This document shows, piece by piece, positions 3,548 to 13,946 of a stretch of 64,000 nucleotides of DNA. Below the pieces are notes generated by a model. It was given only the letters and a program-made list of their open reading frames with translations. It had not been told where the DNA came from and made no database searches. Made by a program: the position numbers and the translations under genes. The stretch lies in contig SMSO01000005.1 of NCBI GenBank assembly GCA_004764695.1, positions 992,001 to 1,056,000 on the forward strand, given 5' to 3'. Source of the stretch: Schizochytrium sp. TIO01 (lineage: Eukaryota; Protista; Bigyra: Labyrinthulomycetes). Each line of letters begins with the position of its first letter. Position 1 is the first letter of the stretch.

Positions 3548-4805
3548 CAATTGGTTTGCTTTTGTAGTTTAAGGACATTCATGAGTGAGATTCGCACCTG
3601 CTAATTGAAGTTTCACTCCACTAATTAGCAGTGGAAAATTTTACATAAGCTTGGAAAAGACAAGATGGCCCAGGTAAAGATCTAATTTGAGCTACAGGTG
3701 CGAAAACGACGCCTTTACTTTCTTCAAAGGTAATCATATTCTCTATTCGAATGACTGGCTTGCAAAACTTGTTCGCGATAAGATACGGATTAAAGCCTAT
3801 GTCATGGACATACATGAAGAAGCCTATGTATATTCTTCGTCATTGTCAGACTTGTCAGTAGTTTCTTGGTTAGCATTTGACTACGATCGTCAGAATCAGA
3901 ATCTTCATCTCACGTCTTCATTCACTACAATATCAACCTAGCTGTAGCCCAGAAGTTCTGAATCGATTTGAATTTAGTGACCCGGGGTATGAATGTTATC
4001 GTCTACTAAATTTGTGTACAATGTGGTCATAGCTATGGCATGTCATCTTCCTAGAGTATTCAAAAGCTCCCGAACAATTGGAGAAAGTTCAGAAATAGTA
4101 TTATTCTATTTCAATCGTTTTTAATAATTGCCGGGGCTTTCAAAAGGATCAAAAATTAACCTTTATAAATCAAGAGTTACAATATATAGACTGGGCTTTC
4201 ATAATTTGTAAATTAGCGCAGCGATTTTTCAAATCCGAAAATTACTGTTGAAAGACAATAGTAGCAGGGCTACATGTAGAATTGCAGAATGCCATGAAGA
4301 CCCCGAGGTTTATAGCAGAAGCGTTTGATGCAATTCGGTCACCGCCTGCATTTCTTGTATAAAAAAATATATCACATGGGCATGAAACCCGTAAAAAAAA
4401 ATGGTAAATCAATCAAAGGTATGTACATAAATTATTCCAGCATTAAAATAATTTCACAATTTAGCCGAGCAACCCGCCAAGTCTCCAGTAGTAGTACCTA
4501 ATGTAAACTCGATTAAAGTATTTTTTCATACAGAATATAAATTAATGTATGCCTATATGACCTATACAAAGCTGATCAAATAGAAAGGAATGCTACGGTA
4601 GAAATAGGAAGAACAACGATTATAGTATTTAATCAGAGTCTAATCAATAAATCCATACTGCGGAGGCTCCGCCTACGCTTCGGCGTTGGCCAGTGCTTTC
4701 GTTGTGCCCACCACCTCCCTGGGCTCATTGTCGCTTGCACTTTCTCAAAAGCTTTTGAGCGCTGCCATATTGTCTGTGCTTAGTGTCTGCCTTGTACATC
4801 GCACC

Positions 4806-7433: not shown

Positions 7434-9278
7434 AGTTGGCTTCGTTATTAATGTGTCACGACTAGACTCATCAGAGAGAGGTTCAACGCTGAAATGGTTG
7501 TCAAGGGCCTTATTGAACTGTTCTTGAAACCCACTAATACGAACTGTAAGACGAAAGCCTGGCGGGAGAGAGAGGGCCTCTTGGTCGATGCGCAAATGAG
7601 TCTGTTTGTAAAGTGCCAAATCGTGTTCTAAATGGGTTGGTTGATGGTGAATATTACGAGAAATGAACACATCGAGTGAACATGGATCCGAGTCGATGCG
7701 CACGGTCTTTGCATAAATTTGGAATCCAAACCATTGAATCCCGCTCGTTTTAATTGAGCCTGGCTTATATGTGTTGGTTTCGTCATTATCATGGACGCGC
7801 GTTATTTGAAGGGAGCAATCCTCAAGGCCAAATCCTTCATCACATTGACAACGACCAAATGTTTCTGAATTGCAAGTTCCATGTCCAGAGCATTCATGCA
7901 TTGATCCACAGAGATCAGAGGCAACTGAACAACCTTTCCCAGTGCTTTCGTGACATTGAAGACCCCCATGCTTAATATAATCCTCTAACATAGCAAATGA
8001 AGTTTCAAAGTTGTTGTTTGGCACATAGTGTCCGGCCTTTGGTACAACCATAAAGGAAAATGTTTCGCTGGAGCGAAAGTAGCCTCCTACCCTTCCATCA
8101 GGAAACCTGTATATTTTTCGATCTTGAACCCAGAATTGGTCCCGTCCAGGGAATTTCAGGTCACGAAGCCAATTATCCTGACCATACGGCCCATCCTTAG
8201 TATCAAACTCGCCAGCATATACAAGCAGCTTCGCATTTCGACTGAGAAGATCTTCATAAACTTTGCTGTAACTGAGAACATTGTCAAGGCTTAAGGCATG
8301 GTCCACACGGGCAGAGCTGATTTCAAACACTGGTGTCTTAGTACTTTGATCAATGTGAATAGATTTATGCACTTCCGGATTGAGAAGGTACTTGAGGACC
8401 ACGTCTTCAAGCGGTTTGAAGTCATAGTCAAATTGACGGGCATCATACACATGCACATTTGCACTGACAAGCTCGATGTATGCTGTTATGTTTTTACATG
8501 CATCCTCACTCATAACTTGATGATTTCCAATGGCTTCTTCACATCGACGTTCCAGAGAAGCAATTTGGGACAAATGTGCAGAATCTAAGAGGCCTAATGC
8601 ATTTGGCAGCACATGCATACGATTACGCTGGCGCAGAGGAGCAACGAGTGGATTGCCAATGAGTGTAGCTTTCACAGAGATGCCCGCCTTATGAAGGGCT
8701 TGAGTAAAGACAGGAAGGTATTTACCTCCGTACGATTCACCAGTTAGGTACAGAGGGAGACCACGACTCCACTCATGCAACTTATAAAATGCATGCATGA
8801 ATGTAACAAATTCGGAAGCCACCTCTTCCATATTATCCAAAAGCGGTTCGCCAAATGAGAAACCAGTTCCAACAGGTTGATCGAGATAGACGACGTTCGC
8901 AAGGCGGCTCCATGTCTGGTTAGTGCGCTCCACGCCTGTTCCATTCGCTTTCACACGCAGAGGTCCATGAAAGAGGAAGTTCGCTAGTTGAGATGATGCT
9001 CCAGGGCCTCCGTTGAGCCAGAACACTAAAGGCACTTCCTCATCATCATCCTCTCCTTCGTAGCGAGCAAGCCAATAGAAGAGGTTGTGATCTGCTGCAG
9101 TCTCAATCGTACCGGCAAACATACACGGAAAACCATTATCTTGGTCTTCAGCAAAGCCTGGAAGGTCTTGTACATGGTGAGGATGATTAATTGGGGTGCA
9201 TTGCTGAGCAGAACCGAGACCTTCTCGCCAGAAAGATGCAACGAGCAGGAAAAAGGAAATTATCCCTGAGCTAAGCAT
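7290..9278 (-). CDS. Secreted serine carboxypeptidase (S10) with C-terminal EGF-like domain
   Basis: Signal peptide; WLNGGPGASS, LDQPVGTGFS, GESYGG (Ser), AGHYVP (His); CSGHGTC...CQCDEGFGLEDC EGF motif. Confidence 0.92.
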   Translation of the reverse strand: MLSSGIISFFLLVASFWREGLGSAQQCTPINHPHHVQDLPGFAEDQDNGFPCMFAGTIETAADHNLFYWLARYEGEDDDEEVPLVFWLNGGPGASSQLANFLFHGPLRVKANGTGVERTNQTWSRLANVVYLDQPVGTGFSFGEPLLDNMEEVASEFVTFMHAFYKLHEWSRGLPLYLTGESYGGKYLPVFTQALHKAGISVKATLIGNPLVAPLRQRNRMHVLPNALGLLDSAHLSQIASLERRCEEAIGNHQVMSEDACKNITAYIELVSANVHVYDARQFDYDFKPLEDVVLKYLLNPEVHKSIHIDQSTKTPVFEISSARVDHALSLDNVLSYSKVYEDLLSRNAKLLVYAGEFDTKDGPYGQDNWLRDLKFPGRDQFWVQDRKIYRFPDGRVGGYFRSSETFSFMVVPKAGHYVPNNNFETSFAMLEDYIKHGGLQCHESTGKGCSVASDLCGSMHECSGHGTCNSETFGRCQCDEGFGLEDCSLQITRVHDNDETNTYKPGSIKTSGIQWFGFQIYAKTVRIDSDPCSLDVFISRNIHHQPTHLEHDLALYKQTHLRIDQEALSLPPGFRLTVRISGFQEQFNKALDNHFSVEPLSDESSRDTLITKPTSELIAARDVIDINRDSRTIVRGSIFRRGLGGVTNLARRLFNLVFVAH

Positions 9279-9691
9279 TTTTCCAATAGGATCCTCTTGG
9301 TTTGTAAGAGCTATAGCTCAGTCTTCAACAAAACTCAGTTCCTGAACGGGACAGTAGTTCTATACAATACGTCTCCCCAAACTCTTTCACCCGTGGTGCG
9401 TGAAAGTAGATACCTAGAAGAACTGGCACTCAAGAGCAGGTAACGATTGTCCTCAATAGTTTCCCTATCTCTGTCTCTGAGCTTGCTAGTCAAAGATAGT
9501 GAAATTGTTGAATAGATCACTACTAAGCTGGCAAGAAACCAATCAAAGTCGCGCTCCTGCTGGAGTGCTCACGAATTGTAATCAGAACTCAAACGAGGAT
9601 CGTAGCCGCCGCGATCTTTTAACTGCTTGAACTCAACAGACTTGTATTAGGATTGTATAGTGAACTCACTATGTGGCAGTACCTGCTAATA

Positions 9692-9831
9692 GGTTATTTG
9701 GGAGATTTGTACTCTTAGATTTTAAACTACAAAATTTGCAAAACTTGCATTTCATAGAAGGAGCTAAGACTCCATCACGAGCTAGTTAGACTAACCCGCG
9801 ACTCAATGAAATGATTTTTTTTTAAAATCAT
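9692..9831 (-). ncRNA. Predicted omegaRNA (scaffold ~9712-9831 plus ~20-nt guide 9711-9692)
   Basis: On the - strand, stem CAUUUCAU/AUGAAAUG encloses an 11-bp G-U-containing hairpin and the hairpin GGAG-UCUUAG-CUCC, whose loop is complementary to CUAAGA at 9718-9713. The position over the 3' end of the nuclease is typical of TnpB/Fanzor. Confidence 0.65.
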
Positions 9832-11691
9832 GTCCTTGGATAGGTAGCGTAAAAGGATGCCTCTGGCGGCATGGACATCACGGTCTGCTACATGGTTGCA
9901 CTTGGGATTAGGGCATTGGAAAACCTTGGATGCGCCGAGTTTATGGTGGAGGGTACCGCACTCATTGCATGTTTTTGAAGTGTAGCTCTCTTGGCAAAGA
10001 ACAAGCTTGCACCACGGGAACATCTCAGCCTTGTGAACGAGAGCCTGACGGAACCCAAAATGGCACCAACGACACATCATTCGAACAGACTTCTTGGATA
10101 TCCGTCGCTCCATCTTCCTACTCATCTTAGAGGTTTCGAATTTAGGCAAGAGAATAACACGATAGTTTTCACAAAGCCAAAGTGCGAGCTTGCGATGAAT
10201 CTCAGTGGTCTTGTTCTTGATCTTGAGTTGGGCGCGATAGAATGCGCGCTTCAAGGGGGTGTTGAAATTGTCTTTATCACTGGATGCAGTTTTCTTATTA
10301 TTTTCTTGAGCTTTATCAATCCTGCTCTGGATCTTATCAACGCGGCGACAGAGATAGAATATGGTTCTAAAATCTTTCCCTGTGCCCCATTCAATGGCGC
10401 GGCCATCAGCGTCATACATCGTCTGAAACGAGCGAACACCTGGATCTAGAGCAATGACACCATGGTGCGCCTTGGGTGCCTGGTCCATTGGACGCTTTTT
10501 TTCTTCTCGTAAGAAGCAGAAGTAGACATGCCCAAGGCGATTCATTTGCACACGCATGGCGTTCGAAATCTGGTCGGGGAGCTTTTCTTTACGTGTTCGG
10601 ATTTTTTTTAGAAAGCCGGAGGTCTTTGATTTCTTCAAATTCCAGGTACGTGCATTCACTTCGAAAATCTGTGATTCATCACGCTTGGTCCGAAACTTAT
10701 AAAAAGATTGCTCATGAACTTTCTTTTGTACAGCGAGTTCTTCGTTTTTGGCTCGTCCCGAGTTAATAGCCTTGAAGAAATCCAGAATCCCGGAATCACG
10801 GATAGCCTGTGGGACCTCGAGAACCCATTCAGGAGCACCATTCCTTTCTTTAGATCGAACGGCTTTCTTTTCTCCATAGAGGGCCCCATGTGTTTTTGGA
10901 TTCCCATCTTCATCTACTAAAACCTGCTTCGTCTTGGAATCCTTTTTGATGCACGCTTCTTGATGCAATTTGATGGCTTCTTCCTCGCCCTTCGCCACGT
11001 CTCGATGAAACGCAACGCCAGTATTGCAGGCTCTTCTAGTGACACCAAACCATTTAAGCAATTGTGTACACTGATCTTTAGTAGGGTATACCCTAACCTT
11101 TCTGGCACGGACAAGGTCATATTCTTTCTTGGTGGTCTTGCGCGCCTTCGTGCGAGTTCGCTTCTTCCTTGCTGCGTCGTCGCCGTCTATTTTGCGCTGC
11201 TCGTTTTCCGTGATGCGATGCCACAAAGACGGTGATAATTCCGAGGAGGTCTTTGGTGAAGGTGTCTGAGTCTCCGGCATGTGCATCTTGGCCGTGTACC
11301 ACGAGTTTGACATTTTTTCTTTCGAAAAGGTGTTCCAGGAGGTCGACTGCGATTCGCGCAAGTCGGTCGCGGTGCATGACCACAACTTGGCCGATTCCTC
11401 CGCGGTCGCAGGCGTCCAGTAGGGAGCACAGGCCTTGGCGTTTGAAATTGACCCCACTACCGATGTCTTTGTAGACGGCGGAAGCATCTGGGTAGGCGCG
11501 CTGGAGATCGCCAATCTGGCGTTCGAGGTCCTCCTTTTGCTTGGCCGAGGACACTCTGGCGTAGATAACGGTACATCCAGAGTTGCGTTGCTCGCGGCCG
11601 GTGGAACCGAGATCAAAGATGCGCTCAACATCGTCGCTGGCGTAGATGCGCTTTCCTCCGGGGAAGCGCGCGCAGCGCACGCATCCGCCAT
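9775..11691 (-). CDS. Fanzor2 / IS607 TnpB-like RNA-guided endonuclease
   Basis: HTH-like KVRVYPTKDQ..L..WFG..R; RuvC-I IALDPG (D 10444-10446); canonical Glu site is Pro (ILLPKF) with alternative Glu in QESYTSKTC (9988-9990); Zn finger CNEC..CPNPKC; RuvC-III DRDVHAARGIL. First ATG 11691 gives 638 aa; the frame is open to GTG 11775. Confidence 0.93.
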   Translation of the reverse strand: MADACAARASPEESASTPATMLSASLISVPPAASNATLDVPLSTPECPRPSKRRTSNARLAISSAPTQMLPPSTKTSVVGSISNAKACAPYWTPATAEESAKLWSCTATDLRESQSTSWNTFSKEKMSNSWYTAKMHMPETQTPSPKTSSELSPSLWHRITENEQRKIDGDDAARKKRTRTKARKTTKKEYDLVRARKVRVYPTKDQCTQLLKWFGVTRRACNTGVAFHRDVAKGEEEAIKLHQEACIKKDSKTKQVLVDEDGNPKTHGALYGEKKAVRSKERNGAPEWVLEVPQAIRDSGILDFFKAINSGRAKNEELAVQKKVHEQSFYKFRTKRDESQIFEVNARTWNLKKSKTSGFLKKIRTRKEKLPDQISNAMRVQMNRLGHVYFCFLREEKKRPMDQAPKAHHGVIALDPGVRSFQTMYDADGRAIEWGTGKDFRTIFYLCRRVDKIQSRIDKAQENNKKTASSDKDNFNTPLKRAFYRAQLKIKNKTTEIHRKLALWLCENYRVILLPKFETSKMSRKMERRISKKSVRMMCRWCHFGFRQALVHKAEMFPWCKLVLCQESYTSKTCNECGTLHHKLGASKVFQCPNPKCNHVADRDVHAARGILLRYLSKDMILKKNHFIESRVSLTSS

Positions 11692-11815
11692 CGGCCCAGC
11701 CCCGAAGGGCGCTTGCTGAGACCCCAAACTTCCGGTGAAAGAACTTTGCTGGTTTGTATTCGAGGTTTGCTCCACTTGCAGTGTTTGGAGCTTGACGGTT
11801 CCTCGGCCTCCCCAT
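11117..11815 (-). CDS. tnpA: IS607-family transposase TnpA (N-terminal HTH + serine recombinase)
   Basis: MerR-like HTH (GVSASALRGWADGG..R.PGGKRIY), then IYARVSSAKQKEDLERQ (catalytic Ser), DIGSGVNFKRQGL, RDRLAR and DLLGIITVF...HGKR. Confidence 0.95.
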   Translation of the reverse strand: MGRPRNRQAPNTASGANLEYKPAKFFHRKFGVSASALRGWADGGCVRCARFPGGKRIYASDDVERIFDLGSTGREQRNSGCTVIYARVSSAKQKEDLERQIGDLQRAYPDASAVYKDIGSGVNFKRQGLCSLLDACDRGGIGQVVVMHRDRLARIAVDLLEHLFERKNVKLVVHGQDAHAGDSDTFTKDLLGIITVFVASHHGKRAAQNRRRRRSKEEANSHEGAQDHQERI

Positions 11816-13946
11816 TTTCTTACCTAACCTCCACTTCTTATCAATAACCTAAATAAACATAATATATGATTAATATGAAATATAAGTTATCGAACTTTTA
11901 ACGGTTTTTGTTTTTGTTTTTTGTTTTTCCCTTATATGATCAATACTGATAGGGTCAGGTAATAATATTTCAATATGTTTAACAAAGGGGTGTTAGTTCA
12001 TTTGACAACTTCATTTTGTTTACAAAGTAAATCCCAACACAGCGCTCACTTAGATTTTGTCGATATGCAAACAATCTCCATACACAAAGGGGACGCCTTT
12101 CCAGTGTTAAACGTATGTAAATATCTGCGCCTAGCATCTGTATAAGTTGTTTCCTCAAAATATCCTGCCTTTTGCATTCTAATAAGCTATTCGCCCTCTT
12201 GAAGTGTATGTGAACATAAGTCTTATACCTAGGTGATCAAAAGGGGATTGTATATGAATCATATAATTTTCTTTATATCATTTTCGCTGTGTTGGGTTAT
12301 ATTCATTGCAAGATGCCTTGTATAAGTTTGAAATAATGTTGATGATCACACTTCCTCATAAAAGAATCCACGCCAGATCAGTGATATTTTCCTGGCTTCG
12401 GAAATATATCAACACGTCGCACAGGCCACGAGCCAATAGCAAGCACTTGAATCAAGCTTACGAAAATTTCCAGGCTCCAATGTTTAATCAAATATCCATC
12501 TGATTTGTGGCTTCAACTTTTGTTTGTAGCTGCAAACCCGCGTTTGAGATTGCTGTGTCCATACTCATACTGACGATGCGTTGCTGCCTTCACCCTCTGC
12601 ATGGAGTATCACTGCAACAAATCTCCATGTTTCGCTAATTGTTGGTGACTGTTTCACTCTATTGCAAAGCCATCAATGAACACAACTTTATACAAACGTC
12701 AAGTAAACAAATCAAAATATCAAGATCTCAGACACAGCTGTTTCGCAGCCATCCTCTAGTTTCCAAAGACTTTAATGTGCAAGCCTGAATTTTTATATCT
12801 CTGGTCAAGGGATTTATAGTCAGCCTTTATTCTGAGTTGGAAATCTATGGATTGAGAAGATCTTATCCACTCGACGAAATTCGCAGTAATTAGTTTTGCC
12901 TCTTTCTTCACTGCCACACAAAAGGCTTCCTGTATTTTTAGCATAGCCGAACATATTCGACAACTATGCTTGCTTGCTCGGACCGTCTGTGCGATTGCCT
13001 AGGTTCACAGAATTCGTGTTTGCCGTATTAGATTTAAGTAATTCTATACCTTTTTTAAAGTTTACACCTTAGTTCGATCCTTGCACCCCCTGATTTATGA
13101 ATCTAAAAGCCTAGAAATGCAATAGAATTCCCAGCGAAATATTCGTTCCACCTGGGTAGCTAGCAACACTGGGATATGAGAGTGCTATCATTGAACGCTG
13201 TAGATCTTGAAACCGAGCCTTTGATAAATAGGCTCAATTAAAGTCCTACTTGTTATAATTCTATAATATTCTCTGTTGCAGTTCAGTGCTGATTTGCTTT
13301 GTTTAGCGGATTCTGGGTATTATTCTCATTTTGAGACAAAAAACTGATAATGATTATAATTCTAAAATTACCCCACCCTTTTCAAATGCAATTAGTACAA
13401 GCAGGTAGTCTTGTAAAAGTCACCCGCATGATGACAAGAGGTTGTTTCCAAAATATTTCGCAAAAGCACAAACAGTGAATAGTTTTGTGCATTAAAAACA
13501 GTGCATTGCATGGACTCAGATTTAACTTATCAAGAACAAATCTTGACAAGAAAAGCTAAGCGCTATTCGACCTTGCGAGAATAGGTCGCCATAAGAATAA
13601 AATATGTGTATACCAGGTATACAACCTCATATCTGGCAAACATGACAAATTAAAACATTTGATGCTGATTATCTCGAATCTAATACCATCAAAACATGAT
13701 ATATTCTTTTAGACTTTTTGAGATTATGCTAAATATTTCCTTCTTCGAGTGAAAAGTTGATTAACCCTCGACCCAAATCACATTTGAACAATCTACGAGT
13801 TCAGAGGTACCATAGCTTATCATTTTCTTTTTCCTGTTAAAAATAAAGGGAATAACACTAGGCCCAGACACTTGCGTCTCAATTATGCATAACTCATGTA
13901 TTAAACTAAACTTCGTTTGAATTAAAAAAAGTATCGTAAGAATCAA

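What the first reader, a model, noticed from the sequence alone, without database searches (positions are those of the whole stretch)
9692..9831. omegaRNA readable from sequence: three-way junction and pseudoknot across the Fanzor stop codon
Seen on the - strand: (i) outer stem CAUUUCAU (9813-9806) with AUGAAAUG (9755-9748); (ii) 11-bp hairpin UCGCGGGUUAG-UCUAA-CUAGCUCGUGA (9801-9775) ending in the UGA stop, with three G-U pairs that form only on this strand; (iii) hairpin GGAG-UCUUAG-CUCC (9773-9760) whose 6-nt loop is exactly complementary to CUAAGA (9718-9713); (iv) an alternative 8-bp hairpin AUGAUUUU/AAAAUCAU (9831-9811). Established: TnpB/Fanzor omegaRNAs overlap the 3' end of the gene and form a pseudoknot just before the guide. 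Inference: the scaffold ends near 9712 and the guide is UACAAAUCUCCCAAAUAACC.
Basis: partly seen in the sequence, partly recalled or inferred. Interest (0 to 1): 0.85.

Follow-up and report, generated by a model that had tools for sequence, protein, structure and literature searches.

The report
Guide-RNA scaffold of a Fanzor2 transposon

Summary
All four pairings are in the sequence at the stated coordinates. The minus strand folds far better than shuffles (z -4.9); the plus strand does not (z -1.1).

The ORF is a Fanzor2-type TnpB, closest solved structure mimivirus ApmFz2. It sits with an IS607 serine recombinase in a 2.2-kb element.

An RNA model finds at least 146 copies of this 3' end in the genome. 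In 26 aligned copies, similarity stops abruptly after ...CUAAGAG (9712). This confirms the predicted scaffold end and a guide starting at 9711.

Hairpins ii and iii keep their pairing through G-U/G-C and A-U/G-C changes. The pseudoknot covaries in metagenomic and giant-virus relatives:
- UCUUAG/CUAAGA here
- ACUUGG/CCAAG
- ACCUAG/CUAGGU
- UCUUAAG/CUUAAGA

Two points do not hold:
- The outer stem that makes a three-way junction is 3.4 kcal/mol worse than four hairpins in series, and relatives do not keep it.
- The UGA inside hairpin ii is copy-specific. The family stop is a UAA about 50 nt upstream, mutated to UUA here.

Contigs that behave like transcriptome data cover the element and cross the 9712 junction. 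No small-RNA data exist.

Pseudoknotted IS607/Fanzor2 guide RNAs are already published, so this is a new member of a known kind. The scan's first readers noted similar omegaRNAs elsewhere in this genome.

The parts
9712..11930 (-). IS607-type Fanzor2 transposon, about 2.2 kb. The right end is exact at 9712. The left end lies between 11911 and about 11930.
   Evidence: Own-genome DNA searches: 3' similarity ends at query position 389 = window 9712. 5' similarity begins at query position ~1090 = window 11911. This copy has an expanded AAAAAC run at 11897-11934.
11117..11815 (-). tnpA: serine recombinase of IS607 type, 232 aa
   Evidence: Pfam Resolvase E 2.5e-20 plus a weak MerR_1 HTH match, below Pfam's cut-off. 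It overlaps the Fanzor N-terminal reading frame in another frame.
9775..11775 (-). Fanzor2-type TnpB ORF, with a copy-specific 17-codon C-terminal run-on. The ancestral stop position is 9825-9823.
   Evidence: Pfam TNB + HTH_OrfB_IS605. Best PDB match is 9b0l ApmFz2, E 1.9e-16. Homologues end ...LSKDMI. Other copies read ATGATTTAA at this point.
9804..9838 (-). It overlaps the last codons and the family's stop codon.
   Evidence: In the MFE fold. The majority subfamily has a different hairpin at the same place, AAGGACA/UGUCUUU, with 84% of cells paired but no covariation.
9774..9802 (-).
   Evidence: 84.8% of cells paired in 93 copies. 9 of 13 pairs show changes on both sides, and G-U/G-C/A-U exchanges keep the pairing.
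9760..9773 (-). The loop 9769-9764 is the 5' strand of the pseudoknot.
   Evidence: 78.4% paired, with A-U replaced by G-C between subfamilies. Relatives have stems GGG/CCC, GUG/CAC, GCU/AGC and GCC/GGC around the same loop.
9727..9757 (-). Stem-loop 4 (CUAUGAAA-UGCAA-GUU-UUGCA-AA-UUUUGUAG).
   Evidence: MFE and alignment consensus. Inner helix 92% paired, outer 67.5%. Kept in L148/L152 as CUGCA/UGUAG and CUGCA/UGCAG.
9712..9726 (-). Single-stranded 3' tail of the scaffold. 9718-9713 (core 9718-9714) is the 3' strand of the pseudoknot. The final AG (9713-9712) is the likely recombination core dinucleotide.
   Evidence: Unpaired in the MFE fold. Covaries with the stem-loop 3 loop. Conserved terminal motif CUAAG-N-G in 93 copies and in relatives.
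9692..9711 (-). Guide (flank-derived). The start at 9711 is shown by copy comparison. The 20-nt length is assumed.
   Evidence: Flanks of 26 copies are unrelated from this base on. This flank is unique in the genome. A contig of run X1 runs 9300-9738 across the junction.

Best explanation
Window 9838-9712 (minus strand) is the omegaRNA (reRNA) scaffold of an IS607-type Fanzor2 element. The element's transcript runs through the nuclease gene, across the right end and into the flank. The last ~125 nt of the element fold into four consecutive stem-loops: SL1 9838-9804, SL2 9802-9774, SL3 9773-9760 and SL4 9757-9727. A single-stranded tail follows. Its CUAAG(A) at 9718-9713 pairs with the apical loop of SL3 at 9769-9764, giving a 5-6-bp pseudoknot immediately 5' of the guide. 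The first flank base, 9711, starts the guide. By analogy with ISXfa1 TnpB and ApmFz2, the nuclease binds the pseudoknot core and uses the guide to cut the transposon-free version of the site next to a TAM. That cut promotes re-copying of the element. The TAM is probably CAG, sharing the AG recombination core with the right end. Shown here: the element boundaries, the conservation and covariation of SL2, SL3 and the pseudoknot, strand specificity, the Fanzor2 and TnpA identities, and coverage of the element and of the 9712 junction by contigs that behave like transcriptome data. Inferred: a discrete processed small RNA, nuclease binding, the guide length, the TAM and the homing role.
For: Boundary: similarity among copies ends at 9712 and the flanks are unrelated. 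Copy number: the covariance model finds 146 matches in the genome. Strand-specific stability: z -4.87 versus -1.09. In 93 copies SL2 is 84.8% paired, SL3 78.4%, the SL4 inner helix 92% and the pseudoknot 70%. The whole structure is 76% paired against 35-52% when partners are slid, and 0/500 shuffles reach the observed covariation. Pseudoknot covariation across lineages: UCUUAG/CUAAGA (window, L143); CCUAAG/CUUAGG (L081); ACUUGG/CCAAG (L141, L146, L149); ACCUAG/CUAGGU (giant-virus contigs L162/L163); UCUUAAG/CUUAAGA (L147, one extra pair). That is 64 of 72 Watson-Crick pairs, and permuting ends among 8 collapsed lineages gives p = 0.002. Protein: TNB + HTH domains. The best solved relative is ApmFz2 9b0l. 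D401, E493 and D588/D590 are invariant in 18 homologues. TnpA resolvase lies in the same element. Literature: ISXfa1 reRNA has three stem-loops plus a pseudoknot between an apical loop and position -3. That pseudoknot is needed for activity and is predicted in Fanzor2s (PMC10711439). The ApmFz2 structure has a pseudoknot at positions -4 to 0 (PMC11832414). Transcription: runs X1 and X4 have zero depth on the upstream intergenic flank, and element depth 100 to 10,000 times that of the downstream flank. An X1 contig crosses 9712.
Against: No small-RNA or RNP data exist, and contigs cannot show RNA ends. X1 and X4 are RNA only by my inference from coverage. Many in-genome copies are decayed and break the pseudoknot, and L158 and L068 each carry an uncompensated mismatch. 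In relatives known from single contigs, the right end is inferred from the shared terminal motif, and the covariance-model E-values there are weak (0.07-0.98). This copy has lost the family stop codon, gaining a 17-aa tail. Its left flank lacks the CAG seen in 17 of 20 other copies, so this particular copy may not be fully functional. No Rfam family matches.
Confidence: 0.8

Rival explanations
1. An 8-bp outer stem (9813-9806 with 9755-9748) closes a three-way junction carrying hairpins ii and iii, with the pseudoknot on top.
For: The 8 bp are perfect in this subfamily. A 4-bp core (UCAU/AUGA here, UCUU/AGGA in the major subfamily) is kept, with one A-U to U-G exchange, in 58-74 of 93 copies. 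Stem i is compatible with hairpins ii and iii and with the pseudoknot.
Against: Forcing stem i gives -34.3 kcal/mol against -37.7 for the four-hairpin fold. Only 59.4% of cells are paired, and 3 of its 8 pairs are broken in about 75 of 93 copies. It excludes SL1 and SL4, which are at least as well conserved (84% and 67-92%). L148/L152 have no sequence between SL1 and SL2 to form it, and L147 has a U-U mismatch in the core.
Confidence: 0.2
2. The conserved right end is only a DNA signal: binding sites for the IS607 serine recombinase. The RNA hairpins are incidental.
For: IS607 ends must carry TnpA recognition sequences, and the terminal AG looks like a recombination core. The paper on IS607 reRNAs notes transposase-recognised bases inside the scaffold (PMC10711439).
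Against: The pairing includes G-U pairs that exist on one strand only, and the stability is strand-specific. Changes preserve pairing rather than sequence in SL2, SL3 and the pseudoknot across lineages. Both roles can coexist.
Confidence: 0.06
3. It is a structured 3' UTR or 3'-end-formation element of the Fanzor mRNA with no guide function.
For: Summed contig depth falls about 5- to 6-fold in the last 100 nt of the element in X1 and X4. An A-run lies at 9823-9815.
Against: The structure ends exactly at the transposon boundary. It has the apical-loop-to-3'-terminus pseudoknot typical of TnpB/Fanzor2 guide RNAs (PMC10711439, PMC11832414). Contig depth is a poor measure of RNA level.
Confidence: 0.05

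Closest known systems
ISXfa1 (IS607) TnpB reRNA, Xylella fastidiosa (PMC10711439)
   Same: Serine-recombinase IS607 element. The guide RNA lies at the right end. Several stem-loops are followed by a pseudoknot between a stem-loop's apical loop and bases about 3 nt before the guide. A fixed recombination-core base is absorbed into the scaffold.
   Different: ISXfa1 is bacterial, with a ~150-nt reRNA, a GG core and a GGG TAM. Here the host is a eukaryote, the scaffold is ~125 nt, the apparent core is AG and the left-flank consensus is CAG. No activity data exist here.
ApmFz2 omegaRNA, mimivirus Fanzor2, PDB 9B0L (PMC11832414)
   Same: It is the closest solved protein. A pseudoknot involving the last bases before the guide forms the core of the scaffold.
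   Different: The ApmFz2 scaffold is 205 nt, with long stems and a pseudotriplex. Its pseudoknot partner lies near the RNA's 5' end (about -192), and its TAM is GGG. Here the partner is the loop of a small hairpin at -58 to -53. Protein identity is low, and only residues 397-599 align well.
ISDra2 TnpB omegaRNA (IS200/605), PDB 8H1J
   Same: The RNA derives from the 3' end of the nuclease gene plus the right end. It has a pseudoknot core next to the guide, and the guide is the flanking sequence.
   Different: ISDra2 uses a Y1 transposase and a TTGAT TAM. Its scaffold ends exactly at the transposon end, with no recombination-core base.
Fanzor1 omegaRNA (SpuFz1, PDB 8GKH)
   Same: A eukaryotic TnpB-derived RNA-guided nuclease whose guide RNA overlaps the gene's 3' end.
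   Different: Fanzor1 RNAs lack the pseudoknot (PMC11832414, PMC10711439). Fanzor1 genes ride in other transposon families with TIRs and TSDs. No Fanzor1 structure was hit by this protein.

Membership tests
IS607/Fanzor2 omegaRNA (reRNA) | Lies on the nuclease's strand, overlaps or abuts the gene's 3' end and runs to the transposon right end | tested here: met
   The scaffold 9838-9712 follows the ORF on the minus strand, and the right end is at 9712.
IS607/Fanzor2 omegaRNA (reRNA) | Conserved scaffold stops at the element boundary, and the guide is copy-specific flank | tested here: met
   26 copies are alike up to ...CUAAGAG and unrelated from the next base. The window's flank is unique in the genome.
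IS607/Fanzor2 omegaRNA (reRNA) | Pseudoknot between an upstream loop and the bases just 5' of the guide | tested here: met
   Exact 6-nt complementarity here. Compensatory changes at three positions plus one paired insertion across relatives; permutation p = 0.002.
IS607/Fanzor2 omegaRNA (reRNA) | Exists as a discrete small RNA bound by the nuclease | not testable with these tools
   Only contigs of public runs were available. They cover the element and cross the junction in X1 but cannot show RNA ends.
Fanzor2 / IS607 element | TnpB-type nuclease with RuvC and zinc-finger (TNB) domains, nearer to Fanzor2 than to Fanzor1 | tested here: met
   Pfam TNB + HTH_OrfB_IS605. Best PDB hit is ApmFz2, with no Fanzor1 hit. 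D401, E493, D588/D590 and the four Cys are invariant. Which residues are catalytic is inferred.
Fanzor2 / IS607 element | Serine recombinase TnpA in the same element; no TIR or TSD | tested here: met
   Resolvase plus a weak MerR match at 11117-11815. No duplication between the 5' and 3' flanks of copies.
Fanzor2 / IS607 element | TAM on the left flank sharing the recombination core with the right end | tested here: inconclusive
   CAG precedes a hypervariable 4-9-nt left tip in 17 of 20 copies, and the right end finishes GAG. The window's own copy shows no CAG (AAG at best). No cleavage assay was possible.
Any Rfam family | Match to a curated covariance model | tested here: not met
   Across 9000-12500 on both strands, the only hit is a chance-level RUF1 match elsewhere.

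The most novel reading that the evidence does not exclude
This is a currently active IS607-Fanzor2 family in a eukaryotic nuclear genome. It would have an unusually compact ~125-nt guide scaffold and an AG-core/CAG TAM instead of GG/GGG. The related organism behind run X19 may carry the empty site, with a 17-nt insertion 16-19 nt from the insertion point. That is the distance at which TnpB-type nucleases cut, so the insertion would be a natural repair scar of Fanzor cleavage in vivo.
Probability: 0.15. Interest if true: 0.75.

Novelty: new member of a known kind. Interest (0 to 1): 0.45.

Why it matters
It shows that a Fanzor2 guide RNA, its exact 3' boundary and its guide can be read from genome sequence alone, then confirmed by copy comparison. 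It gives natural compensatory-mutation evidence for the pseudoknot in eukaryotic and giant-virus Fanzor2 relatives. Previously the evidence was one cryo-EM structure, one bacterial mutagenesis experiment and folding predictions. The family is abundant, covered by transcriptome-like contigs and apparently polymorphic between related organisms. Its scaffold is much shorter than ApmFz2's and its TAM is probably different. That makes it a reasonable candidate for biochemical testing as a compact genome-editing nuclease, and for studying what RNA-guided nucleases do for transposons in eukaryotes.

Tried and rejected
Rfam scan of 9000-12500 on both strands found nothing relevant.

Searching the genome with the 192-nt right flank for an empty allele or paralogous site found only the locus itself.

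Contigs of other strains or species around the neighbouring gene could therefore not be fetched, and the possible empty site in X19 could not be read.

The covariance model R1 gave only weak E-values on metagenome loci (0.07-0.98). I accepted those matches because they lie directly after the homologous ORF and share the terminal motif, not because of the E-values.

MAFFT alignment A4, from stem-loop 3 to the end across lineages, did not keep the terminal motif in register. The pseudoknot table was therefore made by hand and tested by permutation.

The MFE 'outer stem' GAUUUUAAA/UUUAAAAUC was rejected. It is only 56% paired and is mostly gaps in the alignment, and it disappears when 10 more 5' bases are included.

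Read laying served contigs only, so it shows no RNA starts, ends or strand.

Organism identity was not pursued. The exact sequences of the two neighbouring proteins are not in the protein collection. The best Fanzor hit is an unnamed MMETSP transcript.

Full report
**Observation**

- stem i: 9813-9806 with 9755-9748
- hairpin ii: 9801-9775, 11 bp with three G-U pairs, its 3' arm ending in the UGA of ORF 9775..11775
- hairpin iii: 9773-9760, whose loop UCUUAG is the exact complement of CUAAGA at 9718-9713
- hairpin iv: 9831-9811

The 124-nt RNA folds at -36.3 kcal/mol against -21.2 +/- 3.1 for shuffles (z -4.87). The opposite strand gives z -1.09. The structure is therefore real, non-random and strand-specific.

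**What the locus is**

- The 666-aa ORF has the Cas12f1-like TNB and HTH_OrfB_IS605 domains.
- Its best solved relative is mimivirus L79 (ApmFz2, PDB 9b0l, E 1.9e-16). No Fanzor1 structure is hit.
- Its best database relatives are two MMETSP transcripts (93-95% identity). More distant ones include a Durusdinium 'transposase A625R' and a Pandoravirus protein.
- A 232-aa ORF at 11117-11815, in another frame of the same strand, is a serine recombinase (Resolvase E 2.5e-20, plus a weak MerR match).
- The neighbours are ordinary eukaryotic genes, a myotubularin and an S10 carboxypeptidase. The genome is 64 Mb in 37 contigs.

**Boundaries**

- The genome holds at least 41 matches to the 3' 700 bases. 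In the near-identical ones (mostly 85-98% identical), the match ends at query position 389-399, which is window 9712-9702.
- Aligning 26 copies with their flanks shows similarity up to ...TCTAAGAG and unrelated sequence from the next base. The right end is therefore 9712 and the first copy-specific base is 9711.
- On the other side, similarity begins at about 11911. This copy has an expanded AAAAAC run, so its true tip may be near 11930.
- There is no target-site duplication.
- In 17 of 20 copies the left flank reads CAG, followed by a hypervariable 4-9-nt tip. The right end finishes GAG. The shared AG fits the core dinucleotide of serine-recombinase transposition. IS607 elements use GG and a GGG TAM (PMC10711439, PMC11832414). 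A CAG TAM here is an inference.

**Structure**

A covariance model built on hairpins ii, iii and a small GCAA/UUGC hairpin finds 146 matches in the genome. I fetched 80 more of them and aligned them with 13 matches from loci already held, 93 sequences in all.

There are two subfamilies. About 20 copies are like the window's and end CUAAGAG. The larger, older and often decayed one ends CUAAGUG.

Pair counts on the 93 sequences:

| Helix | Cells paired | Note |
|---|---|---|
| Hairpin ii | 84.8% | 9 of 13 pairs changed on both sides |
| Hairpin iii | 78.4% | A-U replaced by G-C between subfamilies |
| UGCAA/UUGCA (inner stem-loop 4) | 92% | |
| CUAUGAAA/UUUUGUAG (outer stem-loop 4) | 67.5% | |
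| Pseudoknot | 70% | |

- For the structure as a whole, 76% of cells are paired against 35-52% when partners are slid.
- The major subfamily has another hairpin, AAGGACA/UGUCUUU, in the place of hairpin iv, 84% paired but without covariation.
- With ten more 5' bases, the minimum-energy fold is four hairpins in series with the last 15 nt single-stranded (-37.7 kcal/mol). Forcing stem i gives -34.3.
- Freeing the pseudoknot bases costs 1.4 kcal/mol, and the 6-bp duplex is worth -4.2.

The best model is therefore four stem-loops plus a pseudoknot between the loop of the third and the 3' tail. The three-way junction is possible but is the weaker reading.

**The pseudoknot**

In-genome copies give limited evidence because many are dead. 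Two sister copies end CUUAGG. One of them (L081) has the matching loop CCUAAG and the other (L068) does not.

The decisive evidence comes from relatives at 35-58% protein identity, fetched from metagenomes and giant-virus contigs. Directly after the ORF they carry a small hairpin whose loop matches the terminal motif:

| Locus | Hairpin | Terminal motif |
|---|---|---|
| L143 | GGG-UCUUAG-CCC | CUAAGA |
| L148, L152 | GUG-ACUUAG-CAC | CUAAG |
| L144 | GCC-ACUUAG-GGC | CUAAG |
| L141, L149 (L146: 5' arm GCC, one C·A mismatch) | GCU-ACUUGG-AGC | CCAAG |
| L162, L163 | GGG-ACCUAG-CCC | CUAGGU |
| L147 | GGG-UCUUAAG-CCC | CUUAAGA |

- Three positions show double compensatory changes, and one lineage has a paired insertion.
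- The hairpin stem itself also covaries.
- Overall 64 of 72 positions are Watson-Crick pairs. Permuting ends among eight collapsed lineages reaches the observed score in 84 of 40,320 permutations.
- In most lineages the first loop base is unpaired, so the core pseudoknot is 5 bp (CUUAG/CUAAG). That is also sterically easier.

**The stop codon**

- Most copies read ATG ATT TAA at window 9831-9823, and the MMETSP proteins end ...LSKDMI.
- The window's copy, and its closest relative L002, read TTA. The frame then runs on 17 codons (LKKNHFIESRVSLTSS) to the TGA inside hairpin ii.
- The family's RNA scaffold therefore overlaps only the last few codons and the UAA, through stem-loop 1.

**Expression**

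Only contigs of public runs could be laid, and only once.

- Runs X19 and X21 have 64 Mb of contigs, equal depth on both flanks, and element depth 10-50 times the flank. They behave as DNA.
- Runs X1 and X4 have 35-39 Mb of contigs and zero depth on the upstream intergenic flank. Their element depth is 100 to 10,000 times that of the downstream flank. Their ~5-kb contigs, if collinear with the window, would end near 4650-4670, at the start of the convergent neighbouring gene. They behave as transcriptomes. This is my inference; the tool only guesses RNA.
- In X1 and X4 depth rises at about 11750 and continues to the right end.
- An X1 contig runs 9300-9738 with one mismatch, crossing the 9712 junction into the flank.
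- This fits a read-through precursor but cannot show a processed omegaRNA.
- In X19 a contig that covers 11935-12300 has 125 further bases on its left. It also seems to supply insertions (17 nt in all) at 9691-9695.

**Comparison with what is known**

- The ISXfa1 IS607 TnpB reRNA has three stem-loops and a pseudoknot between an apical loop and position -3. Breaking the pseudoknot lowers activity more than 10,000-fold, and restoring it rescues activity 100-fold. The same paper predicts the pseudoknot in Fanzor2s and shows that the fixed recombination-core base belongs to the scaffold (PMC10711439).
- The ApmFz2 structure has a pseudoknot at -4 to 0 as the scaffold core, and Fanzor1 lacks it (PMC11832414).
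- The present RNA has every sequence-level defining feature that I could test. It differs in size (about 125 versus 150-205 nt), in the position of the pseudoknot partner and in the probable core/TAM. It is a new member of a known kind.

First readers of this scan noted similar omegaRNAs at five other places in this genome, none followed up.

**Verdict**

It is wrong or unproven on the three-way junction and on the meaning of the stop-codon overlap. The finding is of moderate interest.

Noticed in passing
window 9815-9825 (minus strand): The A-run after ATGATTT varies from 6 to 11 A among copies. This copy and L002 have TTA instead of the family's TAA stop, which adds a 17-aa tail to the nuclease.
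   Followed up: yes
window 11117-11815 and 9775-11775 (minus strand): The recombinase gene lies almost wholly inside the Fanzor N-terminal reading frame, in another frame. The Fanzor N-terminal region is conserved as protein in homologues at 38-47% identity (W-rich motifs), so both frames look coding. Other agents of this scan have already reported this.
   Followed up: partly
window 9691-9695, run X19: A DNA-like run of a related organism shows 17 extra bases 16-19 nt from the insertion point. They come from a contig that also covers the far flank from 11935 on. This may be an empty site with an indel at the distance where TnpB-type nucleases cut. I could not read the contig.
   Followed up: partly
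L023 (G000:C30:8395846-8396029): A 184-nt fragment holds only the omegaRNA region. It is preceded by ACAGTA, the same motif that flanks full-length left ends. It may be a minimal, guide-RNA-only derivative of the element.
   Followed up: no
genome-wide: Matches to the right-end scaffold (at least 146) clearly outnumber matches to the left end (about 49). In the DNA-like runs the last 200 nt are 2-3 times deeper than the middle of the ORF. Many copies must be 5'-truncated or short derivatives.
   Followed up: partly
window 9704-9905, runs X1 and X4: Summed contig depth drops about 5- to 6-fold in the last 100 nt of the element in the transcriptome-like runs, but not in the DNA-like runs. This may reflect mRNA 3' ends near the A-run or removal of the scaffold by processing. 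Contig depth is too crude to decide.
   Followed up: no
L141, L144, L146, L149 (metagenome contigs): More distant relatives share a conserved CC(C/U)AUG-hairpin-CUG block and a UUGUAGA motif. They place the pseudoknot hairpin before, not after, the long GC-rich stem. The order of scaffold modules therefore differs between lineages.
   Followed up: no
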